From positions 186,001 through 250,000 of the IMG/VR virus record IMGVR_UViG_3300033997_000243: 64,000 nt of DNA. One strand, 5' to 3'. The translations under genes and the position numbers were made by a program. Positions 23,202 to 54,516 of this stretch are shown one piece after another; the first letter of the stretch is position 1; each line of letters opens with the position of its first letter. The notes below the pieces were generated by a model. It was not told the origin of the DNA. It ran no database searches and saw nothing but the letters and a program-made list of their open reading frames with translations.

Positions 23202-24725
23202 ATGGATGATATTACAATTCGTATTGAAGCATTTGAAAACAGATCTGATCTTGATGGAGCAAGAGCAAAAACTTCAGAATTCGGATCAGATGTTGCTTTC
23301 GTACAAGTAGAAGAACCAGATCCGCTTAATATAAAATTTGCGTACAATGCCCAATCAGGTGTTTTATCTTTAATCCGTGGGCCTGATGATATTATTCAGG
23401 CCACTGGTTTTCTTACGCAAAAAAGTTTGGGAACTGGAAGAAGAGGAAAGAAAGGAAAAAGAGGCAAAGACGGTCGTGATGGGAAAACTGGTTACGATGG
23501 TCGTGATGGAAAATCTGGATGTCCTGGAATTCAAGGTGTAAAAGGAAAGAAAGGACTTCCAGGTCGTGATGCTGATGATGGCCCAATTGGGCCAATAGGT
23601 AAAGCTGGTTGTGGTGGTGCTGAAGGTGAAGAAGGTGAAAGAGGAAATAAAGGAATAATCGGCAATGAAGGATCTCAAGGTTTAATGGGATCTAGTTGCA
23701 AGCAAGGGCCGGATGGCCCTGACGGTGAAAAACCTTTGGAAACAGTTTTATTTTCTGACGTTCCACCAGTAGATAATCTGCTTGCTTTTATTTGGGCAAA
23801 ACCTGTCAACAGAGATCAAGTAGATCCAACAGATCCATTGCCGCCAATAGATACTCCGTCACCTTTAAATGGAAGAGTAGATAGTTTATCAATGAATGTT
23901 CCTCCGGTCGGTGCTGGTTGGTATCAAGCAATTCTTTATTTTAAAGTGAATTCTTTAAGTGGTGGAGTTGGGCCTTTTAACTATAAATGGTCTGGTGATT
24001 TTTCGACAAACGCAAATCTTTCAGTAGTTGATACTGGAATGACATCTGCAAACTTGAATTTGAAGTGTAGAATTTATATTGCTGGAACAGAAACCAGAAA
24101 AATTACTGGTGGAATTCGTTGTACAGTAACAGACGTAGGTAACGGCAACAATCCACTACTGTTAGATGCCACTTACACATTCAACATTGTTGCGACGGCT
24201 TCTGGAGGCGGTGACAGTGGAGGCGGTGGTGGAGGCTGTATCGTTTTTGGTCAACGTGTTAATTTAGTAAATGGTGAGCAAATTCAAGTTCAATCTATTT
24301 TACACGGTGACAGTTTAATCGGCGCAAGCATAGAAAGTTTGCCGGACAGCTCTAATGGAAACTCTAAATTTTTAGATTGGTTCACTTCTGATCTTAAATC
24401 GAAAAATACAACTGTCACGGCTATGTCTGTTAAACACGGAACTTACCATAGTTACTACAAAATAAATAATGTTTTGAAAATAACTTTGGAAGAGAACATG
24501 CTTTGCTTGCGCGGAGGCTATTGGTCTTTTAGACGAGTTAAAGATCTTCGTGTTGGAGACTATTTATATCATCGAACAGAAGGTGCTAAAGAAATTCTCA
24601 GCATTGAACAAATAAGTGAACAAGTTAAGACAGTATCTTTAGATGTTGAGACATCAGACACTTACTATGTTGAAGATTATTTAGTTCACAATCTGGATGT
24701 CGGTGGGCCTGTGATTAAGAAATAG
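23202..24725 (+). CDS. collagen-like tail fibre protein with a C-terminal Hint domain
   Basis: about 33 Gly-X-Y triplets, a beta domain, poly-Gly linker, then CIVFG...LVHN. Confidence 0.8.
   Translation: MDDITIRIEAFENRSDLDGARAKTSEFGSDVAFVQVEEPDPLNIKFAYNAQSGVLSLIRGPDDIIQATGFLTQKSLGTGRRGKKGKRGKDGRDGKTGYDGRDGKSGCPGIQGVKGKKGLPGRDADDGPIGPIGKAGCGGAEGEEGERGNKGIIGNEGSQGLMGSSCKQGPDGPDGEKPLETVLFSDVPPVDNLLAFIWAKPVNRDQVDPTDPLPPIDTPSPLNGRVDSLSMNVPPVGAGWYQAILYFKVNSLSGGVGPFNYKWSGDFSTNANLSVVDTGMTSANLNLKCRIYIAGTETRKITGGIRCTVTDVGNGNNPLLLDATYTFNIVATASGGGDSGGGGGGCIVFGQRVNLVNGEQIQVQSILHGDSLIGASIESLPDSSNGNSKFLDWFTSDLKSKNTTVTAMSVKHGTYHSYYKINNVLKITLEENMLCLRGGYWSFRRVKDLRVGDYLYHRTEGAKEILSIEQISEQVKTVSLDVETSDTYYVEDYLVHNLDVGGPVIKK
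24237..24692 (+). other. Hint (intein-like) domain 1
   Basis: block A C-I-V-F-G; block F/G VSLDVE...YYV..YLVHN; residue after HN is Leu; block B His replaced (TLEE). Confidence 0.85.
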
Positions 24726-24736
24726 GTAGGTATTTT

Positions 24737-25381
24737 ATGTTGACGAAAGTTCCAACTAAATTAATTTCAGCGCCTCAAGGAACAAACGGTCAAAGTCTTG
24801 TTGTTCAGGATAAAAGAATAACAGCTCAATCTACTGCAACTCAAACAGTTTCACCTATAGAAGATTGGTTTTATGATGCAAGCGTTGGTGTTCTCACAAT
24901 TCGTTTGTTGAATGGAACAACTCAAACTTTAGGTGGATTTCCAATATTATCTGATATTCCTGAAGGCCCACAAGGAGCACAAGGAGAACCAGGAATTGAT
25001 GGAAAAGATGGTCGTGATGGTCGTGATGGTCGTGATGGCGAAGCTGGTTGTGTAGGTGCAGCTGGTGAAAAAGGTGATGACGGTGATGATGGCCGTGACG
25101 GATTAGAAGGGCCAGTTGGCCCACCAGGTATTCAAGGATGTGAAGGCCCAAGAGGAAAACGTGGGCCAAAAGGTGAAGATGGAGATCAAGGCCCACCTGG
25201 AAAACAAGGTCTTCCAGGAATTGAAGGGCCACCTGGAAAAATGGGAAAACAAGGGCCACCTGGAAGAATAAATATTATTGTAAGTGAAACTGATCCAGGT
25301 CCAAGTTTAGGTAATGGTGGAATTTGGGTTAATCCTTTAATTGGTCAGATAGATGATGATACTGATCAATTTTTTACGTAA
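24737..25381 (+). CDS. collagen-like fibre protein
   Basis: about 33 Gly-X-Y triplets; (GGTCGTGAT)3 DNA repeat; C-terminal DPG...G.IWV. Confidence 0.85.
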   Translation: MLTKVPTKLISAPQGTNGQSLVVQDKRITAQSTATQTVSPIEDWFYDASVGVLTIRLLNGTTQTLGGFPILSDIPEGPQGAQGEPGIDGKDGRDGRDGRDGEAGCVGAAGEKGDDGDDGRDGLEGPVGPPGIQGCEGPRGKRGPKGEDGDQGPPGKQGLPGIEGPPGKMGKQGPPGRINIIVSETDPGPSLGNGGIWVNPLIGQIDDDTDQFFT

Positions 25382-25393
25382 GGAATTTTTAGC

Positions 25394-25888
25394 ATGAGTG
25401 GTTTAACAAAATTAAACTTATCTATGGTAAGTCCACCACTTCAAAATGGCGGAGTTATTGCGTCAGGCCAAAGTCTCACTGTAGATCCAAAAACAATAGA
25501 TCTTTCTGAATTTAGTGGCTACTATGATCGTACACAAGGAATACTAACTTTAAATATTCCTACGATTGGAAAAATTAATATTGGAAATTTTCCAACATCT
25601 GCGGATATTGGTACAGGACGCACAGGGCCAAGTGGTCGGGATGGTGTAGCAGGTGTTGATGGTTTAATCGGTGAAACTGGTCAAAAAGGTTTGCAAGGTT
25701 GTCGTGGGCCAGAAGGCCCACAAGGTCGTCAAGGTGAACGTGGGCCGCGAGGTCTAACTGGGCCGCAAGGTGAACAAGGTATTCAAGGTATTCAAGGCAA
25801 TGACGGTCGTGATGGACGAGTTTTAATTTTTGTTCAAAGTGAAGATCCCGGAAGCGTTGGGGCTGGTGCGCTCTGGGTACGGCCCTAG
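25394..25888 (+). CDS. collagen-like fibre protein
   Basis: about 22 Gly-X-Y triplets; paralogous N- and C-terminal caps. Confidence 0.85.
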   Translation: MSGLTKLNLSMVSPPLQNGGVIASGQSLTVDPKTIDLSEFSGYYDRTQGILTLNIPTIGKINIGNFPTSADIGTGRTGPSGRDGVAGVDGLIGETGQKGLQGCRGPEGPQGRQGERGPRGLTGPQGEQGIQGIQGNDGRDGRVLIFVQSEDPGSVGAGALWVRP

Positions 25889-30311: not shown

Positions 30312-33300
30312 ATGGCAGGAACTCCATTCACAACTATTTACGAAAATTTAGGATCTAATGCGACAACTGTTCCTGGAATTTCGTGGAAGTTTGACCATGA
30401 ATACATTATCTACACGATTGAAAGAAACGCAGATGATGAAGTAGGTGTTGTTTATATAAATACACATGCGGCTTCTCTTCGAGCTATTGATCGTGGATTT
30501 TTAGCTGTAACGGTTGACGCATGGATTGTTCTTGATCGTCAAACAATGCAGATTAAAAGCGAATCACGTAAAGGTGATGCTTGTCCAATTTTAAAAGTTT
30601 TAGAGCGCCCGATTACAGTTGGCGTATCGGACTTTACTTCAGAAAATTGGGAAGTTTATTATTCAGGCCCTGGAGTTGTACAATTAAATATTGACTGGCC
30701 TGATGATTATGAATACGTTATCTTTGTTCACGCAACAGAGCCTCCTGGTCGCTATCCAGATCTTAAGTGGTCTATATGCGCTCACTTCTTTTGTCCGGCA
30801 GCAATGAATGCGAGTGATATAAATGGCGGTGGTTATTTAAAACCGATTGAAGGTGCGTCAGGTGTAATGATGTATCGTGGTCGGTTTTCTAGTCCAACTG
30901 GCAGACATATTCGTAGATTCGACAAAGGTGATGGTTTAATAGCGTATATACTTCGCAGAAAATTTAGAACTGATACCAAAGCAACAACTGAATTTAATAG
31001 TTGGAAGCAACACACGTTTGCACTTCCTAATGGCATACAAGCTGGTGGAAATTGGCGTGATGCTAAACCTTATGCTTGGCCTGATGATACTGAAATAATG
31101 GTAGTGTCACAAGATCCTAAAGGTAGCACAGAAATGGCTACTTCTTATTATTTCACAGATTCAAACATTCAGAATACAACTCAAATAAATTGGCGTGAAC
31201 GCGGTTTATTGTATGATGCGGGTTATGATCATTATATAGAGTTGTTGAAACCTATTTGGCAAAACCGTGGAACCAAACATATCCGTTCAAGTGATGGAAG
31301 AATTTTTGCAGCGTGGGAAAAACTACCCACGTTAGATGTTCCACCGCCAGAACCTCCACCGCCAGTTGATCCTGTAATTGATTGTCGCGCTTGCGTACCA
31401 GCTGGATCTTTGTGGGAGCAAACTGCAAGTATTGAAGTTCGTTTTGTTAAGCCTGATGATTGGCAATTACGCAATTATCGCTATGATTGGCACGGTGACA
31501 TCGGCAACGGTTCTGTGGAATTAATTGGAACCGAAGCTAATGGAAGAATTGCAAAAATTCGTTTTGTAAAAATGTTAGAACCTACCGATGATGGAATAAT
31601 GTTTCCTATCAATGTGGCGGTTACAGTTTATGATATGGATTATGCTTCGGCTGGAGTACAAGATAGTGATACAGCAATCATCGAATTTGAATTACCTTGT
31701 ATTGTAGTGGCGAATCAGCCGGATATAAGTATAGAGGATATTACTGTACTTGAGCAAGACATCAATCATGTCGTACAGGTTACAGTTTCTTTGTCTGAAC
31801 CAGCAACTGCGGAAGCACTAACAGTAGATTGGCAAACTCGTGATGGTACTGCGAAAAGCGATCTGAGTGTTAAAACACTTGCTAGGGATGATTTAGGTAA
31901 TCCATTTATAACCGTTATAGAAAGTTTAGATAGTAAAGTCAGGACTTATATAGATGGTTGTTTTCCAAAATGGTATGCTGCAAGTTTTTACGACAGATTG
32001 AATACACCTAAATTTCAAACAACATTTTTATTCACGCAAAACATAATTAACTGGTTATCCAGAAATAAAGTTGGAGGTCAAGTTTTATTATTAGGTGATA
32101 AGACGAACGATCCTTACAATGTTAAACTATCTAACGCAAATGATTTTTTCCCTGTATTCGATGCCGCAGCAACAGCCACAGGAAGAACTTTAGTTGTTGA
32201 ATATGTCTATGATATAGTTCCATCTAAAGCATATTTCGATTCCTTCGATTGCATTATTTATATAGGCAGTCACTATACAGGCGATCAAGTTAATTCACCT
32301 GAATTTATTACTGCACTTGTAGAAAGTCATTTAGGTGGAATCGGAGCAGCATTTATATCTGATCATGGTGTTGATGATATTAATGGGGCTGGTTTTTTCA
32401 AAGGCGTTAATGAAGTTTTGATCAATGCTTTTGGTATAGGACTAAAGGGCAATATAGATCGCGGATCTATGGTACTTACTGTGGAAAACGCAAAAGCTAC
32501 TTTAGGTGATCATCCATTGTGGGCCGGATTAAGCGGCCAAATAGATGCAGGATCTTCAGAAGCGTATGTTGATGCAATAGATAGTGAACCGGATTATATA
32601 AGTGGTCGAGGAACTTTAGTCTTTGCTGTCGGTGAGCAACACAAAATAATCGAGGTTACAATTGTTGGTGATACTACAATTGAGAATGACGAATATTTTG
32701 AAATAATGATCTCGAATAATAGTCGAGGTCAGATAGTAAAAAATGTTGGTCGTGTTACACTTCAAGATGATGATGCTCAACCTTGCGGTGTCACAACAGG
32801 ATCTGGTGGTACTGGTGTCACAGAAACAGTTCATAATATGGGATCTGAATCAGGCCAAGTAACAGTTGGTTTTGATATGTTCGGTGTTCCAGATATGATG
32901 GAAATTTTTTACGATGGAGTACGCGTAGCCGCAACAAGCAGAGATTTAAGTAATCCATACCCAAGTGGAACTGGACGCTATTACAATCTTCCAAATGGAA
33001 ATAAAGATCTTCCAACTGAAGTAAGTGGTGCTGGTACTCTATCATTTTATTATGAAGGGCCACCAAACAAACCTTCAACAATCATGATTCGTATGACTGG
33101 GCCAGACGGAACTGCATGGAATTACAATTTAGATTGTCCGATTCCTGTTGAGGAGCCGCCACCGCCAGCAGTAACAATTGCTGGAATAAGATTTAGAAAT
33201 TTAGATCCAGCACCTGGAGCAGGAGCAATTGCAATAGGTTATATTGATTTTATAAAATCGGATAGCACTATTTACGATTTTGGTAATGTACTGCAAGATA

Positions 33301-34226
33301 ACTATGTAAATTGTACTTTTGAGCATGGATATACAGAAGGACAACCTGTGCAATATCAAAATAGTTATAAGCCGCGTCAAGCAATTAATGGCTATCAAGA
33401 AGGATCTCAATGCAGTCACCGCGATTACTATGGCCCATTCACAAATGATGCGTACTTATTAATTCGTTTATCTCAAATGACGGATATAATAGGTTTCAAC
33501 ATGATGGATTGGCATTATTGTAATGACAATGGCGCTCCAGTGTTTCGCGCTCCAGCACTTCCATACAGCATAGATCTTTTAGATCAAAATGATAATGTGA
33601 TTTGCACACAAACAGTAACAAGTTATGTTAGTCCGGCGGCAGATACAGTTGGTTACGTTCCAATACAATTCCCTTGCGATCCTGTAATTGGTGGAACAAG
33701 TGTAGGTGGCGGAAGTGCAGATTGTTTTGCATACGGAACTTTGATAACTATGTCTGACGGTTTTGAAAAAGAAATCGAAGATATTGTTATTGGAGAAACA
33801 GTTAAAACTTTTTCCATAGAAGGATTAACTGATGCAAATGCTGAAAATCCTGTGGACTATTTAACTTGGTCAACTTACGATCTGCAAATAAAAGAATCTA
33901 CTGCCGCAGTAACATCAGTTTCTTATCACGAAACTAATCTACATCATAAGATTTGGATAGAAGGCAAAATAGATCCTATAAGGGTCACTGCGGAACATCC
34001 ATTCTTAGTTAAGTTTTCTGATAGAAATGATTGGGTATTTGATTACGCTCGTTATCTTAAAGCAGGTGATACTGTTTTAGATTCAAGTGGTCGGCAAATA
34101 AAAGTTCTATCGAATCAATTGATATACGGAAATATTAAAACTGTCCGTCTGGATGTTGAAACGCTAGATACTTATTTTGCTGGTGGAATTCTTGTACACA
34201 ACAAAGATACTACAATACAACAGTAG
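30312..34226 (+). CDS. multidomain fibre/adhesin protein with a split Calx-beta domain and a C-terminal Hint domain
   Basis: Pro linkers; ISIEDITVLE..DGTAKS / DY..G.L.FA.GE..K.I.V.I.GD...E.DE.F; ends CFAYG...LVHN. Confidence 0.8.
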   Translation: MAGTPFTTIYENLGSNATTVPGISWKFDHEYIIYTIERNADDEVGVVYINTHAASLRAIDRGFLAVTVDAWIVLDRQTMQIKSESRKGDACPILKVLERPITVGVSDFTSENWEVYYSGPGVVQLNIDWPDDYEYVIFVHATEPPGRYPDLKWSICAHFFCPAAMNASDINGGGYLKPIEGASGVMMYRGRFSSPTGRHIRRFDKGDGLIAYILRRKFRTDTKATTEFNSWKQHTFALPNGIQAGGNWRDAKPYAWPDDTEIMVVSQDPKGSTEMATSYYFTDSNIQNTTQINWRERGLLYDAGYDHYIELLKPIWQNRGTKHIRSSDGRIFAAWEKLPTLDVPPPEPPPPVDPVIDCRACVPAGSLWEQTASIEVRFVKPDDWQLRNYRYDWHGDIGNGSVELIGTEANGRIAKIRFVKMLEPTDDGIMFPINVAVTVYDMDYASAGVQDSDTAIIEFELPCIVVANQPDISIEDITVLEQDINHVVQVTVSLSEPATAEALTVDWQTRDGTAKSDLSVKTLARDDLGNPFITVIESLDSKVRTYIDGCFPKWYAASFYDRLNTPKFQTTFLFTQNIINWLSRNKVGGQVLLLGDKTNDPYNVKLSNANDFFPVFDAAATATGRTLVVEYVYDIVPSKAYFDSFDCIIYIGSHYTGDQVNSPEFITALVESHLGGIGAAFISDHGVDDINGAGFFKGVNEVLINAFGIGLKGNIDRGSMVLTVENAKATLGDHPLWAGLSGQIDAGSSEAYVDAIDSEPDYISGRGTLVFAVGEQHKIIEVTIVGDTTIENDEYFEIMISNNSRGQIVKNVGRVTLQDDDAQPCGVTTGSGGTGVTETVHNMGSESGQVTVGFDMFGVPDMMEIFYDGVRVAATSRDLSNPYPSGTGRYYNLPNGNKDLPTEVSGAGTLSFYYEGPPNKPSTIMIRMTGPDGTAWNYNLDCPIPVEEPPPPAVTIAGIRFRNLDPAPGAGAIAIGYIDFIKSDSTIYDFGNVLQDNYVNCTFEHGYTEGQPVQYQNSYKPRQAINGYQEGSQCSHRDYYGPFTNDAYLLIRLSQMTDIIGFNMMDWHYCNDNGAPVFRAPALPYSIDLLDQNDNVICTQTVTSYVSPAADTVGYVPIQFPCDPVIGGTSVGGGSADCFAYGTLITMSDGFEKEIEDIVIGETVKTFSIEGLTDANAENPVDYLTWSTYDLQIKESTAAVTSVSYHETNLHHKIWIEGKIDPIRVTAEHPFLVKFSDRNDWVFDYARYLKAGDTVLDSSGRQIKVLSNQLIYGNIKTVRLDVETLDTYFAGGILVHNKDTTIQQ
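33723..34202 (+). other. Hint (intein-like) domain 2
   Basis: block A CFAYGT.I.M.DG..K.IEDI..G; block B TAEHPF; block G LVHN; residue after HN is Lys. Confidence 0.9.
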
Positions 34227-34323: not shown

Positions 34324-34545
34324 ATGCCAAAGGCAGTTGTTTTGAGAGTCAGGGACGTTAAAAACGTCCTTGATCCTTTTCATATAAAGAATTTTCATTT
34401 AGGTGGCTGGCGTGTTCGTCATGAAAACAAATGGATCAGAATGGTTCCAGAAAATACTCTGATTAAAAATCCAGATCATGATCCGGCTGTACACGCACCA
34501 GATGATACTGAATTTCCGTTATATACACAGGTGGTATCAGAATGA
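34324..34545 (+). CDS. small virion-associated protein (start MPKAV)
   Basis: GGGAG SD; R..N.W pattern like the N-terminus of 26910. Confidence 0.55.
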   Translation: MPKAVVLRVRDVKNVLDPFHIKNFHLGGWRVRHENKWIRMVPENTLIKNPDHDPAVHAPDDTEFPLYTQVVSE

Positions 34546-35315
34546 TAACTAGACTACCTTTAGCAATGATCAACGCTGGATCAACAAGTTTAGCAGGACA
34601 AAATGTTACAGTTGTTCAGCCGGGAGTATTAGCTGCACAAGATCCGTCTGCAACTGTTCAACCTGCTGTTATACAAGGAACGTATGACGCGGATAGTGGA
34701 ACAGTTACAATAGTCAATGCTGATAATTCGATAGTTTTAATTTCTGGTTTTCCAACAATAAGAAGTTTACCAACTGGACAACGTGGGCCAGAAGGTAAAC
34801 AAGGTATTTCTGGAGTAGCAGGAAGAAATGGTCGTGATGGTCGTCCTGGAGAACAAGGTTGTCCTGGAGTAAAAGGTGATCGTGGCTTGCGAGGCCCAAT
34901 TGGGCCAGAAGGCCCACGAGGGCCGCAAGGAGAAATCGGCCCCAAAGGTGACAAAGGTGACAAAGGTGACAAAGGTGATGCAGGTATTGATGGCCTTGAA
35001 CCAGAATATGTAAAGACAAGTCGTGGAGCATCTATTTATTTACAAAGAAGCGGTGGAACAATTCAAAGTGGATTTTTTGAAAATGCTCTACAAGACAGAA
35101 CAATAACTTTACTGTTTCCGAGAAATTTAATAAACGGTGTTGTAAGTATTGTATTGTTCTTTAAGAATCCAAGTAGCTACCAAGCTCTGAATTATGAAAT
35201 AGGTGAATATTTCTACGATGATTTAGAAATTGGTGGTGTAACAATAACTCTTAAAGGAACTCCACCTGCACAGCTTGAGCCTTGGCAGTTCTGGTGGTTT
35301 GTAATGGGCGATTAA
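34542..35315 (+). CDS. collagen-like fibre protein with a C-terminal globular domain
   Basis: about 25 Gly-X-Y triplets; (AAAGGTGAC)3 repeat; shared N-cap. Confidence 0.85.
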   Translation: MITRLPLAMINAGSTSLAGQNVTVVQPGVLAAQDPSATVQPAVIQGTYDADSGTVTIVNADNSIVLISGFPTIRSLPTGQRGPEGKQGISGVAGRNGRDGRPGEQGCPGVKGDRGLRGPIGPEGPRGPQGEIGPKGDKGDKGDKGDAGIDGLEPEYVKTSRGASIYLQRSGGTIQSGFFENALQDRTITLLFPRNLINGVVSIVLFFKNPSSYQALNYEIGEYFYDDLEIGGVTITLKGTPPAQLEPWQFWWFVMGD

Positions 35316-35317
35316 TC

Positions 35318-35821
35318 ATGCAACAATCTAAGTACCTTAGTTACGATCCAACTGTTGAAACTGGCCCGAATATTCGCGGTCAATATTCAACAAAAGAACT
35401 GGCTGGAAAAAATCATATTCTTGTCACAGCTCTTGAAGTAGAGCAATTTAGAAAAAACCCAAATGGATTCAGAGTTACACTTGGTAAGTTGGAAAAGATT
35501 AATCAGCCAAACATTTCAACTGTCCAAAGAATGCAGACAGAAAAAGAAATAACAAAAACAACAATCACAAGTCCTTTAGAAATAGAGCACGGTGATGCAA
35601 AATTTGTATATATTCCAGATATGACTTTGCAACTAAATACAGCACTCGGTTTGCATTTATGTATTCACGATAAAAATAAAACGGTAAGTTTGCCTTGTAA
35701 AGTTGTGGAATCAGATACTTGGATATTTCGAGATCACACATATGAAGATCTAGTGCGACTGGCTACTGCTATCAATGATCGCCGTGAATCCATCAGTTCA
35801 GGTGCTTACGAAACTTTGTAA
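35318..35821 (+). CDS. putative tail fibre assembly/accessory protein
   Basis: start MQQSK just after the fibre gene; position typical of fibre chaperones. Confidence 0.45.
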   Translation: MQQSKYLSYDPTVETGPNIRGQYSTKELAGKNHILVTALEVEQFRKNPNGFRVTLGKLEKINQPNISTVQRMQTEKEITKTTITSPLEIEHGDAKFVYIPDMTLQLNTALGLHLCIHDKNKTVSLPCKVVESDTWIFRDHTYEDLVRLATAINDRRESISSGAYETL

Positions 35822-35833
35822 TAGGGTAGATCA

Positions 35834-36748
35834 ATGGACACACTATTAATAGGGCTAGTTAGTGAGTGTTTGAGTAAAGCTGTAGCTTTGGGACTGACGG
35901 CATCCAATAAAATAGTTTTAGCTGTAGGATCTACACAAAACGAAACAGCTTTAATTTATGTCAGTGCTGTTGAACCCACTGGGCCAGAACTTCCACTAAA
36001 TTTTATGTGGATAGTTTCAGATTCTAACAGTGCAGATTATCAGAAGATTCTGAGAAGAACTTCAAAGACTGCAAACTTTCCTTACCAAAATACTTACGAA
36101 TATCCAACGGTATATGCAAACGTAATAAATACATTTCCTGTATATGATGCTGTTGACGGTTTTATTCGCCCTGCATTAGAAAATCATAGATATTCTGTAG
36201 GAAATGCTCATGCTGCTACTCCAACTCAAATTGGAGCAGTTAATATAAATGGCGATACAATGCTTGGCAGTTTAAAAGCCAGAGCAAATTGGAGATCTGT
36301 TCCATTACAACCAGAAGAATTTATTCCTCTGCAAAAAATGACAGATAGCCTTAATAGTCAGACTCAAGGCTTTTACACTATTCTAATGCAGTTATTTAAT
36401 AGAATAGGTGCAGTAGAAACAACTAACGCTCAGTTAGCTCAAAGAATTACAGCTTTAGAGACAACTGGTGGTGGCCAAATAGATCCAAATCTTGTTCCAC
36501 GTACTTATGTACATGAACAAGCAGAAGCAGAACCTACTTGGATTATAAATCACAATCTAGGTACTCAATTCTTAATTGTACAACATTGGGTTCATATTAA
36601 TACACCTGATGGGATAAAATTGGAATTGGCTGGAGCGGAACAAGTTGTTATAGTAAATGACAATTTTGTTTTAATTGATCATACGATACCAGCAACAGGA
36701 ATAGTTGTGTTGTTGGAAGCAGGGTTAGAAGTAGTTCCAGAGGAATAA
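35834..36748 (+). CDS. virion structural protein with H.Q...W.I.HNLG domain
   Basis: GN.H..TP.QIGA..GD.M.G.L fibre motifs, coiled coil, HNLG domain. Confidence 0.65.
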   Translation: MDTLLIGLVSECLSKAVALGLTASNKIVLAVGSTQNETALIYVSAVEPTGPELPLNFMWIVSDSNSADYQKILRRTSKTANFPYQNTYEYPTVYANVINTFPVYDAVDGFIRPALENHRYSVGNAHAATPTQIGAVNINGDTMLGSLKARANWRSVPLQPEEFIPLQKMTDSLNSQTQGFYTILMQLFNRIGAVETTNAQLAQRITALETTGGGQIDPNLVPRTYVHEQAEAEPTWIINHNLGTQFLIVQHWVHINTPDGIKLELAGAEQVVIVNDNFVLIDHTIPATGIVVLLEAGLEVVPEE

Positions 36749-36752
36749 GATC

Positions 36753-37691
36753 ATGCGTTATTTGATAGGTGCATTATTTTTAGCGTTTCAGACTTTTGCC
36801 AACCCTTTGTTGTCTACTGAAAAACCTATCATTTATTACGTAACTCAAAATCCAATCAGCACACATTATGGAGATCCGATAGCCAGTTATTTAGCGTCCA
36901 GATTCAATAGCCATCAAGTTCTTGCATATTATATGCAAATGGATGTTGGAGGTTCAAGATCTAATGAAAAGTATTTACTGGATATTGTAGTTCGTGATGT
37001 GCAAAATGTTAAACCAGCTTATGTGTTTGTGTACAATTCTGGAATAGCTGCTGATTTGAAGCGAGAGCTAGGAAATAAATTTATTGTAGCTGATTTTTCT
37101 ATAGTATCTTCCAGCACAGATATTGTTATTGAGAATCCTATAGCTAAATTGCTACACGTTTTATCTGAATTCGATTATGAATACGGCAGGGTTCATATCT
37201 TAACAGATCAAACAAATCAAAGTGGGCGCAATGCTAGACTTTACAAAACTCTGTTACTAAATCAAGGCATAAAGGAAAATTTGGTTGAGATTCATAAATT
37301 TGAGAATGTCAAACAACTGGAATTGAAGCTAAGATCTTTAAATGCAGAGCCGCACGGAATTATTATAAATGCGATGTATGTTCTAAAGGATCAGGAACTA
37401 AGTAAGTTTAGTTATGCGGTCGATCTAAAAAACATTGTTGTACGCATTAACCGAAAACACATTGATGTAAATGGTTATCTAAGCCCTGAAGAAAACGAAG
37501 CGCTAATATTTTCAATTGACACAAAAACGGCTGGTGATTATTTTGCAAATAGTGTTTTAGGAACCAAAACTAAACTCAGTGGTACTGTTAAATTTAGAGT
37601 CACATTAAATGCAAAGCGCATGAATGAACTTGGCTTTAAAGATAACTATCTTCGCGGCCTTCATAATGTGGATGCACTAACAAATGACTAA
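36753..37691 (+). CDS. secreted periplasmic-binding-protein-like (ABC_sub_bind-like) protein
   Basis: signal peptide MRYLIGALFLAFQTFA; alternating alpha/beta pattern; C-terminal LNAKRMNELG like the family IN.K.A..LG motif. Confidence 0.55.
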   Translation: MRYLIGALFLAFQTFANPLLSTEKPIIYYVTQNPISTHYGDPIASYLASRFNSHQVLAYYMQMDVGGSRSNEKYLLDIVVRDVQNVKPAYVFVYNSGIAADLKRELGNKFIVADFSIVSSSTDIVIENPIAKLLHVLSEFDYEYGRVHILTDQTNQSGRNARLYKTLLLNQGIKENLVEIHKFENVKQLELKLRSLNAEPHGIIINAMYVLKDQELSKFSYAVDLKNIVVRINRKHIDVNGYLSPEENEALIFSIDTKTAGDYFANSVLGTKTKLSGTVKFRVTLNAKRMNELGFKDNYLRGLHNVDALTND

Positions 37692-37977
37692 CTTTAGCCA
37701 AAAACAAGTTAAGTGGATTTTCCTTATATTGCTTTTATTTGTTCTCGGTGTTGTGTTCGGTGATTTTTATTTAAACCGAGAAGATGACAAACAAAAAGCA
37801 ATACGAGAAGAATTCGTACTTTGTGTCAGCGCTGTATGCTTAAATAAAAAAGTTGGGCAACAGTGTGTAGAAATGGCTCCTGTTATTGCTCGTGTTGTTG
37901 TGGCTGAAGATTCTGTTGAACGTGATGCTAAAAGGTTAATCATTGAGACTGGTAATGAATGCTCAGTACACAACTAG
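37684..37977 (+). CDS. small single-TM protein with a 4-Cys soluble domain (antiholin-like topology)
   Basis: N-terminal hydrophobic helix; four Cys. Confidence 0.55.
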   Translation: MTNFSQKQVKWIFLILLLFVLGVVFGDFYLNREDDKQKAIREEFVLCVSAVCLNKKVGQQCVEMAPVIARVVVAEDSVERDAKRLIIETGNECSVHN

Positions 37978-37992
37978 ATAAAGGGTTGACGG

Positions 37993-38526
37993 ATGGGCGG
38001 CTTTTTTGAGTATTTATCAAGTTCAGCCCCAAGCACAGTGATACTTGCAGTATTACTTGTTGCCTGTGGTTGGTATTTGTATAGCCACGGCTTACCTGCT
38101 ATTCAAAACCAAAAGACGTTCGAGGAAGAACGGGAAAAGTGGCAGAAAGAAAAAGATGAATTAAATGAGGTTATTAAAAACCACGTAACGCAAGATTCGA
38201 CAGAACAACTTCTGTTAGATCTAATAAAAACATGCCAAGCAACTCACGAAATGGTATCTAGCTTAGTAGTAGAAACTGATAAAGAGTTTGTTGAATTGGC
38301 AGGTAAACTGGATAAACTTATCGGTACATTGAAAGAAGTTTCGGCAAGCAGTGATAGCACATTATTGCGAAGGGTAGAAGGACTAGATGCCGAACTCAGG
38401 CTTATAACCCAACAAGTCAGTGCAGTAAGTTACCGATTAGCAACAATAACTGGTTTGTTGATCGGAAATCAACAGAGGTCTGCGCTATCTGATTTAATGG
38501 GGAACGACGTAAAGGATCTCAAATGA
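37993..38526 (+). CDS. single-TM coiled-coil membrane protein
   Basis: TM segment VILAVLLVACGWYLY followed by heptads. Confidence 0.6.
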   Translation: MGGFFEYLSSSAPSTVILAVLLVACGWYLYSHGLPAIQNQKTFEEEREKWQKEKDELNEVIKNHVTQDSTEQLLLDLIKTCQATHEMVSSLVVETDKEFVELAGKLDKLIGTLKEVSASSDSTLLRRVEGLDAELRLITQQVSAVSYRLATITGLLIGNQQRSALSDLMGNDVKDLK

Positions 38527-39254
38527 AAGATCTTGCATTTAAAGCCATTGTCAGTTTAGCAAATAGCCATGTTGAACAAAAGAAACATCATTTGATTACA
38601 ATGTTTTTAAACAGTCAAAGATATAAATTTTCGGAAACAAGTTTGTTTGTACTTGAGTCTGAAATAGATTTACTCAGTGAAACAATTCGTTGCATGGAAA
38701 ACGAATTTCTAAATAATTTAGACATAGAGGCTGCGAGAGTAAATATCATCAATGATCTGCAAAGAGCAATGACATATCAAATTGCAAGCTTAAAATCTAG
38801 GTCTGAGTTAGATCCAAAATTGCGTCTTGTGTACTTGAACATAAAGCAAAAGTACATAAGGGTCGTGGCGGAACGTGTCAATTCTTTGATACAGTCTAGC
38901 CGAGAAGCAAGCTACACAGAAACCGCAAACTTTTTGTGTAGCGTTTTAAACCATGTTGGTTTTATTTTAAGTGAAATCGACTATCTGGTTTTTTGTAAAT
39001 CTCAAGAAAATTTTGATCCTTTTATCACACTTGATTATTTAGATCTCATATTCACAAGAGATATAGATAAAACATTTGTTGTAGAAAGATTGAAATTCTA
39101 TAAGGACAATGGACTTTTGAGAGACAAATTTCTTTGTGTGAAATCGTATTTAAACGCTGAGCGGTTGGAAAGTGATCAAACGCTCAACGATACTTACGAG
39201 TTGACACTAGAGGAAATAAAGAAGTGCGGGTTTGAAATTGTTTGTATTCTTTAA
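38523..39254 (+). CDS. hypothetical helical protein
   Basis: ATGA-coupled ORF. Confidence 0.6.
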   Translation: MKDLAFKAIVSLANSHVEQKKHHLITMFLNSQRYKFSETSLFVLESEIDLLSETIRCMENEFLNNLDIEAARVNIINDLQRAMTYQIASLKSRSELDPKLRLVYLNIKQKYIRVVAERVNSLIQSSREASYTETANFLCSVLNHVGFILSEIDYLVFCKSQENFDPFITLDYLDLIFTRDIDKTFVVERLKFYKDNGLLRDKFLCVKSYLNAERLESDQTLNDTYELTLEEIKKCGFEIVCIL

Positions 39255-39277: not shown

Positions 39278-40972
39278 ATGTCTAAACAATATGGTTCTTT
39301 AACTTTTATGGGCCAAGGCCAAATCAAAAATTTCACACCTGAGAAACTGGTAGCTGATCCAGCTGGCGCAGGTTTGTGGGAAGGTCGTGTATGGACAAAC
39401 ACAACTGACAATGTTATTCGCTTTTATTTAGATGGCGAAGTAAAACAATTTGCCGAAGGTGGTTCACTGGACGATTATTTACGTCGTGACGGTTCACTGG
39501 CAATGTTAGGTGCTTTGCTGTTAGACAGCGATGATCAAAGTGCTGCTACTGATTTAACTGCAATCAGTAAAGGTCACTTAGATACTCAATTAGCTACCAA
39601 ACAAAACACTATCACTGGTGCTGCCACTTCAATCACTACCGCTGATTTAACTGCTGAGCGTGTTGCTGTTTCTGATGCTTCAGGTAAAGTTGCAGTTTCT
39701 ACTGTAACAACTACTGAATTAGGTTATGTTGGTGGCGTTACTGGCCCAATCCAAACTCAATTGGATGGAAAACAAGCTGATTTAGGCTTCACTCCAGTAA
39801 ACCGTGCTGGCGACAGCATGACTGGTCAGTTAGCAATGAACGACAATCGCATTAGTGGTGTTGGTGCGCCGTTGAATGCAACTGATGTCGCTCGTAAAAT
39901 CGATTTAGAAACTGCCATTGCAAATCTGAACTGGCAAGATGATGTGTTAGCAATTCAAGTTGATAACACATTAGTTCCACAGACTGTTGAAGGTGCTCGC
40001 TATATCGTTACTGATGTTGCGAATCTGAATGCAGGTTTCGGAACTATCGCTGGTGTTGGTGACAACGACATCGTTGAATATATGGATGGATCTTTCGTAG
40101 TTGCCTACGATATTTCTACAGCTGGTGCAAATGCCGCTGGTACTTTTGCTACCAACTTAGATGATGGTTCATTCTATCGTTACAACGGCGCTTGGGCACG
40201 TTTTGAAGGTGTCGATTCAATCGTTGCGGGTATCGGTTTAGTTCGTAGCGGAAATACTTTCAACGTAAACATGGGTGCTGGTATTTCTCAGTTACCTACT
40301 GATGAAGTTGGTATTGATGTTCGCGCTAACAGCGGTTTATTCTTAACTGTTGATGGTTCAACTGCTTCTACTGATACTTCTGCTGCTTTAGCTGTTTTAT
40401 TACAGTCTGCTGGTGGTTTAAGTTTCGGTGTCGATGGTGGCGTACAAATCGCTTCGCAAGGCGTTACTGCTGCAATGTTAGGTGCAGTTGTTGGTAACGG
40501 TTTAGCTGGTGGTAACGGTGTTGCGATTTCTGTTACTGCTGGTGATGGTATCACTGTTGATGGTTCTGGTGTAAGTGTTGACGAAACTTTCTTAGATGGT
40601 CTGTATGCACGTTTAGATGGTGCGGATTTCACTGGTGCTGTTACAGTTCAAGCTCCGACTGTTGATGCAAACCCTGCTCGTAAACTGGATCTGGATAACT
40701 TAGATACAGAATTAAGTGGCGCAATCAACGATGTGAACACGCGCATTTCTGCTGGTTACTTCGTTTATGATGGTACTGCAACAGCTGCTTCTACCCACAC
40801 TGTAACACACGGTATGGGCCAGAAATATGTCGGTGTAACTGTTGTAGATGAATTCGACAACGTAGTTGGTGTTGACGAAATTACTTTCGTTGATGCAAAC
40901 AGCTTTACTGTTGACGTAATTCCTGCAAGTAAAATCCGTGTTATCGCTGTCGGTGCTGCACCTTTAATTTAA
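39278..40972 (+). CDS. abundant fibre/whisker-like structural protein
   Basis: GD.MTG.L and G.GL repeats; strong GGT/GCT/TTA codon bias; C-terminal HGMG domain. Confidence 0.7.
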   Translation: MSKQYGSLTFMGQGQIKNFTPEKLVADPAGAGLWEGRVWTNTTDNVIRFYLDGEVKQFAEGGSLDDYLRRDGSLAMLGALLLDSDDQSAATDLTAISKGHLDTQLATKQNTITGAATSITTADLTAERVAVSDASGKVAVSTVTTTELGYVGGVTGPIQTQLDGKQADLGFTPVNRAGDSMTGQLAMNDNRISGVGAPLNATDVARKIDLETAIANLNWQDDVLAIQVDNTLVPQTVEGARYIVTDVANLNAGFGTIAGVGDNDIVEYMDGSFVVAYDISTAGANAAGTFATNLDDGSFYRYNGAWARFEGVDSIVAGIGLVRSGNTFNVNMGAGISQLPTDEVGIDVRANSGLFLTVDGSTASTDTSAALAVLLQSAGGLSFGVDGGVQIASQGVTAAMLGAVVGNGLAGGNGVAISVTAGDGITVDGSGVSVDETFLDGLYARLDGADFTGAVTVQAPTVDANPARKLDLDNLDTELSGAINDVNTRISAGYFVYDGTATAASTHTVTHGMGQKYVGVTVVDEFDNVVGVDEITFVDANSFTVDVIPASKIRVIAVGAAPLI

Positions 40973-40989: not shown

Positions 40990-41022
40990 AATTGGGGCGG
41001 CATTTGACTGCCCCAATTTTTT
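40990..41022 (+). terminator. intrinsic terminator
   Basis: AATTGGGGCGG...CTGCCCCAATT followed by TTTT. Confidence 0.75.
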
Positions 41023-52863: not shown

Positions 52864-53211
52864 ATGGAGCAAGTAACAGCAACTCAACTACTTGGCCCAC
52901 TGATGAAATATTCATGGGATTATCTTATCTTAGCCTACGCATTTACTTTGCTTGGTGTAGCAATACACTGGGTTAAAAAATGTGTGCAGGATAAACTGGA
53001 CTTTGTGAAATACTGGACTTGCAACAAGCAAAGCAGTATTTTAGTTGTCTTAACTACAACAGCTGGTTATTTTACCACGCTTATCATTGATCCGAATCCA
53101 AATTTAATGACGTTTATTGGTATTAGTTATATGGCCGATAGCATATTAAACAGGGACGGTGGCCCAAAGGTGAATCCAAATGTCAGAACTCCAGACGAAC
53201 CAAGTTATTGA
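52864..53211 (+). CDS. putative holin
   Basis: small protein with 2-3 TM helices and a charged C-tail at the head of the lysis cluster. Confidence 0.6.
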   Translation: MEQVTATQLLGPLMKYSWDYLILAYAFTLLGVAIHWVKKCVQDKLDFVKYWTCNKQSSILVVLTTTAGYFTTLIIDPNPNLMTFIGISYMADSILNRDGGPKVNPNVRTPDEPSY

Positions 53212-53542
53212 AGTTAAAGAAGTGTGGTATAAAAAGTGGGGTAAGTATATTCTTATGGGATTACTTGCTATACTTACACTGGGCGCGTATGCTTATGCAG
53301 CGCGTTCAAAAAACCCTACGGCTACAACTGATAAACTTGATGAAATCGACAGAGATATTATTGAGGATAAAATTGTTGATGCGAATGCTGTAGGAAAAGA
53401 AATAGAGGCAGAGCAATCCGATATGCAACAAATTAAGGTTGCTGGTCAAGATGCTTTTGATTCTGTTGCAGATCAAGCAGTTAATAAAACCGATGATCAA
53501 AAGATTGCGGATTTTAATGCAAGTATGAAAAAACGGAGATAG
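53180..53542 (+). CDS. putative inner-membrane spanin (i-spanin)
   Basis: basic N-terminus, one TM, helical periplasmic part. Confidence 0.55.
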   Translation: MSELQTNQVIEVKEVWYKKWGKYILMGLLAILTLGAYAYAARSKNPTATTDKLDEIDRDIIEDKIVDANAVGKEIEAEQSDMQQIKVAGQDAFDSVADQAVNKTDDQKIADFNASMKKRR

Positions 53543-53545
53543 TCA

Positions 53546-54055
53546 ATGGCTACAGAAAATTACTTGGTAAAACATTCAGAGCAAATTTCTGTAGCCAATG
53601 CCTTCTCTGCGAAATTTCACAATAGTCTGAAAATCGAAGCACATGATGGCGGCTACAAGTTTAATTTACTTGCAGATTTTAGTATGGATTTTTGTTGGGA
53701 CATAGAAAATAATTGCCCTATACTTCCAACAGATAATAAGTTACGTAAGTTCAAGATCGCGACGTTAACAGCAAGAGAAGGTTTTGAATCTGATCTTATT
53801 AGTAGTCCTCGATTCCTATGGTCGCTGTTTCCTCCATTTGGTAGTGGACTAAAGGCATCGGTTATTCATGATCTACTTTATAGAAATGATATTCCTTCTC
53901 CATCAGGGCAATTTTACACGCAGAAAGATGCGGACTTAATTTTTAAAATAGGTTTAATTGTTGAAGGCGTAACCGACAGAAAATCTTGGGCAATGTACAA
54001 TGCACTTCGTTTAGTTGGATTTCGTGCTTGGGAAGAAAACAGGGGAATGAAATGA
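53546..54055 (+). CDS. DUF1353-family protein
   Basis: GF.SDL.S.PR..W..FPP.G....A.V.HD.LY and AD..F...M..A.R..G. Confidence 0.85.
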   Translation: MATENYLVKHSEQISVANAFSAKFHNSLKIEAHDGGYKFNLLADFSMDFCWDIENNCPILPTDNKLRKFKIATLTAREGFESDLISSPRFLWSLFPPFGSGLKASVIHDLLYRNDIPSPSGQFYTQKDADLIFKIGLIVEGVTDRKSWAMYNALRLVGFRAWEENRGMK

Positions 54056-54516
54056 AATACGCTCTAATTGTTTTATCAATGTTTCTTTTTGGATGTGCTA
54101 GTGCGCCAGAGCCAAGAGAAATACAGACCAAAAAGATTGCAGAATTCGTACACAAAGAAGTAACTCCTGTGAGTATTCCAGAAGCCTTCACGCATGATGT
54201 AGGTAAGTACAAAGACGCCAACGGTAAAACATGGGCGCTTGTTGATCCAGATGATTTGGTAAAAATAGAGCAAGCGTATATCAGTGCTGAATCTAATGCA
54301 GCACTTGTGGAACAGGCCAATTTAATTTTAGAATTAACTGTCCAACGCGCAAACTTAATTCGTGAGCTTGCAGAGCTAGAGGAATACAGAGCATTGAAAA
54401 TGGAAGTTGTTTTAAAGGATGAAAGGGAAAGCAGAAGGGAAGAACAGTTGCGGAATAGTATTGAAAGCATAACACTGAAAATAATTACTGCACTTGCATT
54501 AGTCGTAGCAATATGA
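54052..54516 (+). CDS. lipoprotein, putative outer-membrane spanin
   Basis: start MKYAL at 54052; lipobox LFG-C; coiled coil; hydrophobic C-terminus. Confidence 0.6.
   Translation: MKYALIVLSMFLFGCASAPEPREIQTKKIAEFVHKEVTPVSIPEAFTHDVGKYKDANGKTWALVDPDDLVKIEQAYISAESNAALVEQANLILELTVQRANLIRELAELEEYRALKMEVVLKDERESRREEQLRNSIESITLKIITALALVVAI

What the first reader, a model, noticed from the sequence alone, without database searches (positions are those of the whole stretch)
36753..39254. Four-gene envelope module: periplasmic binding protein, Cys-rich TM protein, TM coiled coil and soluble protein
Seen: tightly coupled genes inserted among fibre genes; the first has a signal peptide and ABC_sub_bind-like ending, with no permease or ATPase nearby. 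Known: this fold also acts as the sensor domain of signalling proteins, and T4 RI/T/RIII sense periplasmic cues to delay lysis. Inference: a phage-encoded periplasmic sensing system that controls lysis timing or superinfection exclusion.
Basis: inference. Interest (0 to 1): 0.7.

Follow-up and report, generated by a model that had tools for sequence, protein, structure and literature searches.

The report
Conserved jumbo-phage envelope module with orphan binding protein
Four tightly linked genes in the tail-fibre operon of a 320-kb phage encode a secreted protein with the fold of a bacterial nutrient-binding protein, two single-pass membrane proteins and a cytoplasmic protein of unmatched fold; the set is kept in the same order across a whole group of giant phages, some of them cultured, and nobody knows what it does.

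Summary
Four co-directional, translationally coupled ORFs sit at the stated coordinates. P1 (312 aa) has a signal peptide that is conserved in every relative. Its confident AlphaFold model is a type I periplasmic-binding fold, and its four best solved matches are exactly the PF04392 (ABC_sub_bind) structures. The whole 319.5-kb genome has no matching permease and no ABC ATPase above the Pfam cut-off. P2 is a bitopic protein with four invariant cysteines. P3 has an acidic N-terminus, one TM segment and a long helical region. P4 is a soluble protein with no fold match.

All 16 IMG/VR relatives, phage NCTB, Pseudomonas phage PaBG and Dickeya phage JA11 keep P1-P4 directly upstream of the same 564-aa tail protein, which was detected in PaBG virions. 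The module is therefore ancestral, not an insertion. P1-P2-P3 also recur beside sheath, tube and baseplate genes in more distant myovirus contigs.

The function is untested. The anatomy fits an envelope-spanning, binding-protein-dependent sensor. Nothing links it to lysis timing or superinfection exclusion. A separate holin/spanin-like cassette lies 13.6 kb downstream. Complex prediction gave no answer.

Verdict: a real, conserved, undescribed module whose mechanism is inferred only. Interest 0.6.

The parts
36753..37691 (+). P1: secreted protein with a type I periplasmic-binding fold, a remote PF04392/ABC_sub_bind relative (312 aa, no Cys)
   Evidence: ORF. AF2 model with pLDDT 87 and pTM 0.84. 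VIA-align top four matches are 3lft, 6hni, 3lkv and 6hnj at Z 14.8-16.1. Foldseek matches PBP-fold proteins at E about 1e-6. In the ESM Atlas, 99 of the 100 nearest clusters carry PF04392, and TM is 0.72-0.73. There is no Pfam hit for the protein itself.
36753..36803 (+). Predicted Sec signal peptide of P1 (about residues 1-17)
   Evidence: A basic n-region, hydrophobic core and small residues are conserved in 16 lineages, PaBG and NCTB. The model shows an isolated N-terminal helix at residues 2-14 followed by a low-confidence linker. No SignalP run was possible.
37684..37977 (+). P2: bitopic membrane protein (97 aa) with a basic N-terminus, one TM segment and a C-terminal domain with four invariant Cys (C47, C52, C61, C93) and invariant D76
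   Evidence: HMM matches in all relatives. No family or fold assignment.
37993..38526 (+). P3: bitopic membrane protein (177 aa) with an acidic N-terminal tail of about 13 aa, one TM segment, invariant Pro35, a long helical/coiled-coil region and a conserved C-terminal ...DLK/GLR end
   Evidence: K+R count is 4 before the TM against 35 in the 15 residues after it, over 16 sequences. Only weak coiled-coil-type hits to SMC/Rad50 and Rz-like families.
38523..39254 (+). P4: soluble, presumably cytoplasmic protein (243 aa, 6 Cys) with a five-helix bundle plus a small alpha/beta domain; the fold is unmatched
   Evidence: AF2 pLDDT 92.7, pTM 0.89. No PDB match by Foldseek (best E 0.12) or VIA-wide (best Z 8.5, within helical noise). 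One AFDB cluster of unknown function at TM 0.77. The PHROG label 'ABC transporter' has no support: no TM segment and no ABC-family hit in Pfam or NCBIfam.
39278..40972 (+). 564-aa tail/fibre protein, always immediately downstream of P4
   Evidence: phrog_16122 at 1.4e-114. Its PaBG ortholog gp257 is a virion protein by mass spectrometry (PMC7412058 Table 1). It co-occurs with P1-P4 in 16 of 16 IMG/VR loci.
34542..36748 (+). Upstream part of the same conserved block: collagen-like protein (257 aa), a 167-aa protein and a 304-aa fibre-like protein
   Evidence: Pfam Collagen at 1.5e-13; PHROG tail-fibre hits. The same order is seen in relatives.
34348..34374 (+). Terminator-like hairpin upstream of the block
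   Evidence: 12-bp stem. This is a consensus scan only.
40990..41018 (+). Terminator-like hairpin 18 nt after the 564-aa gene, the likely end of the transcription unit that contains P1-P4
   Evidence: 11-bp stem with 6 GC pairs and a T-run. This is a consensus scan only.

Best explanation
P1-P4 form an envelope-spanning module made late in infection together with the tail fibres. P1 is exported by its signal peptide and acts in the periplasm as a ligand-binding, Venus-flytrap-type protein descended from the PF04392 solute-binding family. It has no transporter of its own. It is proposed to dock on the disulfide-bonded periplasmic domain of P2, in the way orphan binding proteins dock on membrane sensors (XylFII-LytS, LuxP-LuxQ, TorT-TorS). 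P2 pairs in the membrane with P3. P3's short acidic tail faces the periplasm, and its long helical region and conserved C-terminal tail face the cytoplasm, where they engage P4. The module would thus pass a periplasmic cue (a small molecule or an envelope state) to a cytoplasmic effector that adjusts a late step of infection. Lysis timing is the most plausible output.

Shown here: the four genes, their coupling, the export signal, the PBP fold, the lack of a transporter, the membrane segments and the strict co-conservation. Inferred: every protein-protein contact, the topologies of P2 and P3, ligand binding and the output.
For: Fold and export of P1. No permease and no above-threshold ABC ATPase in the 319.5-kb genome.

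Topology hints for P3: K+R count of 4 before the TM against 35 after it. A distant ortholog carries an Arg-rich DRR-repeat C-terminal region that is unlikely to be exported (L044).

P2: a basic N-terminus, and Cys pairs conserved even in distant versions. P4 has no TM segment or signal peptide and is Cys-rich.

Translational coupling. The four genes are kept together in the same order in 16 of 16 IMG/VR relatives, NCTB, PaBG and JA11. P1-P2-P3 are kept together in five further myovirus lineages in different tail-gene neighbourhoods, which points to one functional unit. The module proteins diverge about twice as fast as the adjacent virion protein, 20-30% against 40-54% identity, as is typical of envelope and conflict-facing proteins.

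Precedent, from general knowledge: PBP-fold proteins signal through membrane partners, and 5xsj (XylFII-LytS) is among the fold matches. T4 holin gene t sits next to tail-fibre gene 38.
Against: No interaction was shown; complex prediction scored 0.00 and returned 'no answer'. There is no kinase, HAMP, anti-sigma or other recognisable signalling domain in P2-P4. There is no similarity to RI, T or RIII.

Conserved P1 residues could not be placed in the binding cleft. A crude test of enrichment near strand C-termini was negative, P = 0.44.

P2's topology is ambiguous by K+R counts, 36 against 51.

A separate candidate lysis cassette exists, so the module is not needed for lysis itself. Universal conservation inside tail-gene clusters could equally reflect a morphogenetic role.
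Confidence: 0.33

Rival explanations
1. Superinfection exclusion or injection block. The periplasmic and inner-membrane proteins recognise or obstruct the tail tip, ejection proteins or an inner-membrane entry factor used by phages of the same tail type. P1 could act as a decoy binding protein that occupies a host permease or receptor. The genes stay with the tail genes because their specificity must track them.
For: Envelope location of three of the four proteins. Constant linkage to tail, baseplate or fibre genes in several lineages. Fast divergence. Precedents from general knowledge: T5 llp lies next to the receptor-binding protein gene, and cor lies next to the tail-fibre genes in T1/phi80.
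Against: The module is a universal core feature across phages of Pseudomonas, Dickeya, Erwinia, Yersinia and environmental hosts, unlike typical exclusion morons. It sits inside a late structural unit bounded by terminator-like hairpins, whereas exclusion genes are usually early. P1 is not a lipoprotein and cannot mask an outer-surface receptor. There are no PADLOC hits.
Confidence: 0.18
2. Morphogenetic role. The module is a membrane-anchored platform or chaperone set (the P3 coil and P4 in the cytoplasm, anchored and stabilised by P2 and P1) on which the neighbouring fibres or baseplate parts are assembled or tethered until lysis.
For: The module is always embedded in tail, baseplate or fibre clusters and is always directly upstream of the virion protein in the Lu11/PaBG group. 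It appears to be co-transcribed with the fibres. P4 is the most recognisably conserved protein of the module, by profile E-values in the most distant relatives.
Against: Known fibre chaperones are soluble cytoplasmic proteins. A Sec-exported PBP-fold protein and a disulfide domain have no obvious part in cytoplasmic assembly. gp253-256 are not among the PaBG virion bands, although only 14 abundant proteins were identified.
Confidence: 0.17
3. Part of the lysis machinery itself. P3 would be a single-TM holin or an i-spanin-like protein, with P1, P2 and P4 as its partners or antiholins.
For: P3 has one TM segment plus a charged helical domain. P2 and P3 have weak PHROG hits to Rz-like spanins, E 0.05-0.06. 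The module is probably expressed late. No classical endolysin family was found elsewhere in the genome.
Against: A holin-like 2-TM protein, a 1-TM protein and a lipoprotein with a C-terminal TM (unimolecular-spanin architecture) lie together at 52864-54516. There is no lipoprotein partner next to P3. P3's acidic N-terminus and K/R-rich C-flank suggest the opposite topology to i-spanins and to T4 T. The spanin hits are not significant.
Confidence: 0.1
4. Auxiliary metabolic gene. P1 is an orphan solute-binding protein that feeds a host ABC importer (aromatic amino acids, by analogy with PF04392) during infection, as cyanophage PstS does for phosphate.
For: The nearest solved structures bind L-Trp, L-Tyr and L-Phe (PMC10443332). 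P1 has a signal peptide.
Against: P1 is too diverged to hit the Pfam model, so it is an ancient phage lineage and not a recent host capture. It is never found without P2 and P3. It is conserved across unrelated hosts whose permeases differ. It lies in a late structural operon.
Confidence: 0.06

Closest known systems
PF04392 (ABC_sub_bind) solute-binding proteins: S. pneumoniae 3LFT (L-Trp), C. difficile CD0873 6HNI/6HNJ (L-Tyr), V. cholerae 3LKV (L-Phe)
   Same: Two-lobe type I periplasmic-binding fold over about 255 residues. These are the top four structural matches, Z 14.8-16.1, above all other PBP families. P1 has an export signal. Protein-language-model neighbours are almost all PF04392. 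From my memory of the family consensus, the C-terminal strand-helix motif (N-x-K/R-x-x-x-x-L-G) also resembles it.
   Different: About 10-12% identity. There is no Pfam HMM hit to P1, and only 1 of 31 family members hits it weakly. No partner permease or ATPase is present. P1 is fixed next to three non-transport proteins in a phage tail operon.
Orphan binding proteins that signal through membrane partners (XylFII-LytS, LuxP-LuxQ, TorT-TorS, ChvE-VirA) and PBP-type sensor domains of histidine kinases
   Same: A PBP-fold protein without a transporter is encoded beside membrane proteins. XylFII (5xss/5xsj) is among the fold matches. The ESM Atlas structural neighbours include PBP-type sensor domains of histidine kinases, TM by query 0.67-0.72, some carrying PF04392.
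   Different: The partners here are two small bitopic proteins and a soluble protein of unmatched fold. There is no kinase, HAMP, GGDEF or receiver domain. No interaction was demonstrated.
Phage T4 lysis-inhibition set RI / holin T / RIII
   Same: The set combines an exported periplasmic protein, a single-pass membrane protein and a cytoplasmic protein. From general knowledge, T4 gene t lies next to tail-fibre gene 38.
   Different: No sequence or family similarity. RI is a small SAR-anchored protein, not a PBP. T is N-in/C-out, whereas P3 looks N-out/C-in. A separate holin-like gene exists here.
Receptor-blocking and exclusion proteins encoded beside tail genes (T5 Llp, T1/phi80 Cor; T4 Imm and Sp as envelope exclusion proteins)
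   Same: Envelope proteins are encoded next to receptor-binding or fibre genes.
   Different: Those are single small lipoproteins or membrane proteins, accessory and host-specific. This is a four-gene core module conserved across a whole phage group.
Two-component spanins (Rz/Rz1)
   Same: P3 has an N-terminal TM segment followed by a long helical region.
   Different: There is no adjacent outer-membrane lipoprotein. The charge distribution suggests the opposite topology. Hits are not significant. A unimolecular-spanin-like lipoprotein lies elsewhere in the window.

Membership tests
PF04392 ABC_sub_bind (solute-binding protein of an ABC importer) | Match to the Pfam model above the gathering score | tested here: not met
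   No hit at E<=1 for P1. No hit at E<=10 in the six-frame scan of the whole genome. One of 31 relatives hits at 6.7e-6, and one distant relative (L048) carries a weak precomputed hit.
PF04392 ABC_sub_bind (solute-binding protein of an ABC importer) | Type I two-lobe periplasmic-binding fold that is closest to solved PF04392 members | tested here: met
   Model pLDDT 87. 3lft, 6hni, 3lkv and 6hnj rank 1-4 at Z 14.8-16.1. TM 0.72-0.73 to Atlas PF04392 clusters.
PF04392 ABC_sub_bind (solute-binding protein of an ABC importer) | Export signal (signal peptide or lipoprotein anchor) | tested here: met
   A Sec-type N-terminus is conserved in all lineages, judged by inspection. No dedicated predictor was available.
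PF04392 ABC_sub_bind (solute-binding protein of an ABC importer) | Partner permease (BPD_transp_2) and ABC ATPase in the same genome or operon | tested here: not met
   PF02653: none. PF00005: only two sub-threshold P-loop matches, both far from the locus.
PF04392 ABC_sub_bind (solute-binding protein of an ABC importer) | Conserved ligand-binding cleft for an aromatic amino acid | tested here: inconclusive
   Conserved polar residues exist (Y60, D152, N206, D213, E215, N233, H236, R289).
T4-type lysis inhibition (RI/T/RIII) | Homology to RI, holin T or RIII | tested here: not met
   No Pfam or PHROG hit to these families for P1-P4.
T4-type lysis inhibition (RI/T/RIII) | Delay of lysis on secondary infection that depends on the genes | not testable with these tools
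   This needs phage genetics in PaBG or Dickeya/Erwinia phages.
Two-component spanin | An i-spanin (N-in TM, periplasmic coiled coil) with an adjacent or embedded outer-membrane lipoprotein | tested here: not met
   No lipobox in P1, P2 or P4. P3's flanking charges favour N-out/C-in. PHROG spanin hits have E 0.05-0.06.
SBP-dependent membrane sensor (XylFII-LytS type) | Orphan PBP encoded with its membrane partner | tested here: met
   P1 overlaps P2 by 8 nt and is never separated from P2 and P3.
SBP-dependent membrane sensor (XylFII-LytS type) | Physical docking of the PBP on the partner's periplasmic domain, and a recognisable output domain | tested here: inconclusive
   Complex prediction gave no answer. 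No known output domain was found in P2-P4.

The most novel reading that the evidence does not exclude
Large myoviruses carry a previously undescribed, ancient envelope-spanning signalling device: a secreted PF04392-derived binding protein, two bitopic membrane proteins and a cytoplasmic effector with a new fold. The device reads a periplasmic cue and sets the timing of late events (lysis or release) in a way unrelated to the T4 RI/T/RIII system.
Probability: 0.25. Interest if true: 0.8.

Novelty: new variant of a known kind. Interest (0 to 1): 0.6.

Why it matters
Three of the four proteins in this conserved late-gene module are targeted to the envelope, and none has an assigned role. The module is present in every member found of the Lu11/PaBG/NCTB group of jumbo phages, and in reduced form in other large myoviruses.

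If it is a sensor, it would be a new example of a lytic phage reading the periplasm, and a new use of the solute-binding fold outside transport and bacterial signalling.

It is directly testable, because cultured phages carry it: PaBG on P. aeruginosa PAO1, and the Dickeya, Erwinia and Yersinia jumbo phages.

It also corrects database labels. P4 is labelled 'ABC transporter' and the upstream fibre-like protein 'HNH endonuclease'; neither label is supported.

Tried and rejected
- **Pfam, NCBIfam and PADLOC scans of P1-P4:** nothing significant.
- **PDB sequence-profile search with the P1 family:** noise only.
- **Complex prediction of all four chains with family alignments:** score 0.00, 'no answer'. 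This is not evidence either way.
- **P4 fold searches** (Foldseek PDB, AFDB clusters, VIA-wide, ESM Atlas): no credible match, apart from one uncharacterised AFDB cluster.
- **P2 Atlas search:** only weak pilin-like and LolA-like shapes, not significant.
- **Enrichment of conserved P1 residues near strand C-termini** as a proxy for the cleft: negative, P = 0.44.
- **Searches for the module in bacterial genomes** through the fibre protein: none found. Searches that needed conserved peptide words in A2 or A4 failed for lack of such words.
- **Endolysin families** Phage_lysozyme, SLT and Amidase_2 in the phage genome: none.
- **Wastewater 'RNA-Seq' libraries:** related strains are present, but transcription cannot be told from carried-over DNA.
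- **Literature:** no paper in the library describes this module.
- **Rejected ideas:** a type I secretion apparatus for the 'RTX-like' fibre, because P4 has no ATPase or TM segment and PaBG gp257 is a virion protein; and a type IV pilin-like P2, because it has no prepilin cleavage motif.
Full report
**Where the window comes from.** The window is bases 186,001-250,000 of a 319,518-bp virus record with direct terminal repeats. The run index traces it to subsurface metagenomes, and near-identical strains occur in wastewater libraries. The + strand from about 14.2 to 54.5 kb is one long late block. It holds a baseplate wedge gene, large tail proteins, several collagen-like fibre proteins and further fibre-like proteins. 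The only GenBank genome with clear DNA or protein similarity around the finding is phage NCTB. NCTB is a 258-kb jumbo myovirus that the literature places with Lu11, PaBG and the Dickeya and Erwinia jumbo phages (PMC7412058).

**The observation.**
- P1: 36753-37691, 312 aa
- P2: 37684-37977, 97 aa
- P3: 37993-38526, 177 aa
- P4: 38523-39254, 243 aa

They are packed as one translational unit. P1 starts 4 nt after the upstream stop, behind a GAGGA. P1 and P2 overlap by 8 nt. P2 and P3 are 15 nt apart with an AAGGG. P3 and P4 overlap as ATGA. Terminator-like hairpins at 34348-34374 and 40990-41018 bracket a unit made of a collagen-like protein, a 167-aa protein, a 304-aa fibre-like protein, P1-P4 and a 564-aa tail protein (consensus scan only). 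Minus-strand ORFs in the region are short and have no support.

**P1.** No Pfam model matches P1. PF04392 also finds nothing in a six-frame scan of the whole genome. A profile search of 1.84 billion representatives found 47 relatives. With 31 of them as the alignment, AlphaFold gave a confident model (pLDDT 87.1, pTM 0.84) of alternating strands and helices in two lobes. Foldseek matched hundreds of type I periplasmic-binding and LacI-type structures at E about 1e-6. Realignment with VIA-align put the four PF04392 entries (3lft, 6hni, 3lkv, 6hnj) in ranks 1-4 at Z 14.8-16.1, ahead of every other binding-protein family. Independently, 99 of the 100 nearest ESM Atlas clusters by sequence features carry PF04392, and structural neighbours at TM 0.67-0.73 include free PF04392 proteins and PBP-type sensor domains of histidine kinases. 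The three PF04392 structures with ligands bind L-Trp, L-Tyr and L-Phe (PMC10443332).

All 16 distinct lineages, plus NCTB and PaBG, begin with a basic n-region, a hydrophobic core and small residues before the likely cut. Almost all P1 proteins lack cysteine. In Dickeya phage JA11 the annotated start removes this signal, but a GTG 117 nt upstream restores it. The genome has no BPD_transp_2 permease, and only two sub-threshold Walker-A-type matches to ABC_tran, both far from the locus. It is a remote relative by fold, not a member by the Pfam criterion.

**P2, P3 and P4.**
- *P2* has a short basic N-terminus, one hydrophobic segment and a C-terminal domain with four invariant cysteines and one invariant aspartate. 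Distant versions keep at least one cysteine pair. That fits a disulfide better than a zinc site, and so fits a periplasmic domain. The K+R counts alone do not settle its orientation, 36 against 51.
- *P3* has an acidic N-terminal tail of about 13 residues almost free of Lys and Arg, one TM segment, an invariant proline just after it, a long helical region and a conserved C-terminal end of the type ...DLK or ...GLR. Over 16 sequences there are 4 Lys/Arg before the TM and 35 in the 15 residues after it. A distant ortholog has an Arg-rich DRR-repeat tail (L044). I infer N-out/C-in with moderate confidence, about two in three.
- *P4* has no hydrophobic segment and several cysteines. It folds confidently (pLDDT 92.7) into five long helices plus a small alpha/beta domain. 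Neither Foldseek nor an exhaustive VIA-align pass finds a credible solved relative; the best Z is 8.5, within the noise for helical bundles. One uncharacterised AlphaFold DB cluster matches at TM 0.77. The PHROG name 'ABC transporter' for its family has no basis in the sequence.

**Co-conservation.** Metagenomic contigs carrying P1 relatives at 64%, 48%, 36% and about 20-24% identity all show the same order: collagen-like, about 165 aa, about 300 aa, P1, about 100 aa, about 180 aa, about 250 aa, about 565 aa. I built HMMs for each of the four proteins and fetched every IMG/VR locus that encodes a full-length relative of the 564-aa protein. All 16 have P1, P2, P3 and P4 in order immediately upstream. 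The same is true of NCTB, of Pseudomonas phage PaBG (PaBG_00253-00256 before gp257) and of Dickeya phage JA11 (gp087-084). P4 relatives also appear in Erwinia and Yersinia jumbo phages.

PaBG gp257 is one of 14 virion proteins identified by mass spectrometry. gp253-256 are not among them, but that survey saw only abundant bands. The module proteins retain 20-30% identity where the 564-aa protein retains 40-54%.

Weaker P1 relatives lead to other myovirus contigs. There, P1-like, P2-like and P3-like genes (HMM E from 1e-30 to 1e-6; weaker for the L041 P2-like and P3-like genes and the L049 P3-like gene) again lie together. In most of these contigs a Cys-rich protein of about 300-411 aa follows. 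They sit next to sheath, tube, gp15-like terminator or baseplate genes. The module is thus ancestral and behaves as one unit. It is not an insertion among fibre genes.

**What it is not.** The module is not a transporter. It has no similarity to RI, T or RIII, to known defence or exclusion proteins, or to spanins beyond non-significant coiled-coil-type hits. The window holds a better candidate for the lysis genes at the end of the same late block:
- a 115-aa protein with two hydrophobic segments
- a 120-aa protein with one TM segment
- a DUF1353 protein
- a 154-aa lipoprotein (lipobox LFGC) with a C-terminal TM segment, the architecture of a unimolecular spanin

This makes it unlikely that P3 is the holin or a spanin. 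It leaves a regulatory role open.

**Mechanism.** The parts suggest a chain across the inner membrane: an exported ligand-binding protein, a membrane protein with a small disulfide-bonded periplasmic domain, a membrane protein whose bulk is cytoplasmic, and a cytoplasmic protein. Orphan binding proteins that dock on membrane sensors are well known in bacteria, so I favour an SBP-dependent sensor whose output acts on a late step, most plausibly lysis timing. Every contact and the output are inferred. The one computational test of contacts gave no answer, and I could not show that the conserved P1 residues line the cleft.

The rivals are a tail-type-specific block to secondary infection, a membrane-anchored assembly or tethering platform for the neighbouring fibres, a direct role in lysis, and nutrient scavenging. 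Universal conservation across hosts weighs against exclusion and scavenging. The export of P1 and the P2 domain weighs against pure assembly. The downstream cassette weighs against a direct lysis role.

The functional reading remains a hypothesis. No paper in the searchable library describes the module, and public annotations call the genes hypothetical or mislabel them. I rate it a new variant of a known kind (binding-protein-dependent membrane sensing, or phage envelope regulators), with roughly a one-in-four chance that it is a truly new phage signalling device. Cultured hosts exist for PaBG and the Dickeya, Erwinia and Yersinia phages, so the question can be settled at the bench.

Noticed in passing
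window 52864-54516 (+): Candidate lysis cassette at the end of the late block: a 115-aa protein with two hydrophobic segments (holin-like); an overlapping 120-aa protein with one N-terminal TM segment; a 169-aa DUF1353 protein (Pfam 3.7e-16; PHROG 'tail assembly chaperone'); and a 154-aa lipoprotein (lipobox LFGC) with a C-terminal TM segment, i.e. unimolecular-spanin architecture (phrog_23384 at 2.5e-9, Rz-like spanin at 0.003). No classical endolysin family was found in the genome.
   Followed up: partly
window 39979-40191 (inside the 564-aa tail protein gene): In contigs of three wastewater libraries (two spanning the site, one broken at it), this 211-nt segment is replaced by about 217 unrelated letters while the flanks stay about 97-99% identical. 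It looks like a swappable variable cassette, possibly the specificity region of the fibre.
   Followed up: no
window about 38,774-38,880 (inside P4): In three 'RNA-Seq'-labelled wastewater libraries the contig depth rises 3- to 10-fold from here through the fibre gene. A sigma-70-like site lies at 38769-38796. This could be an internal start for the fibre mRNA, or only better assembly of the more conserved gene. These libraries may contain DNA.
   Followed up: no
window 30312-34226 (+): A 1304-aa fibre-like protein whose NCTB ortholog is annotated 'large intein domain protein'. Its C-terminal part hits phrog_38766, a virion structural protein family shared with collagen-like fibre proteins. 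Its domains were not analysed here.
   Followed up: no
window 35834-36748 and 38523-39254; L039 (Dickeya phage JA11): Database labels look wrong. The 304-aa fibre-like protein falls in a PHROG called 'HNH endonuclease', and P4 in one called 'ABC transporter'. RefSeq copies both names. The annotated start of JA11 gp087 (the P1 ortholog) cuts off the signal peptide, and a GTG at L039:3268 restores it.
   Followed up: partly
L041, L044, L048, L049, L050: More distant P1-P2-P3 modules occur in other myovirus-like contigs beside sheath, tube, gp15-like and baseplate genes. In most of them the fourth gene there is a Cys-rich protein of about 300-411 aa (up to 11 Cys) that the P4 HMM does not hit. 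In L041 the P1 relative has a signal-anchor instead of a cleavable signal. In L044 the P3 relative carries Arg-rich DRR repeats.
   Followed up: partly
window 23202-25888 and 34542-35315: Four separate collagen-repeat proteins lie in the tail block, in line with the 'hairy' whiskered tails that I recall being reported for relatives of this phage group.
   Followed up: no
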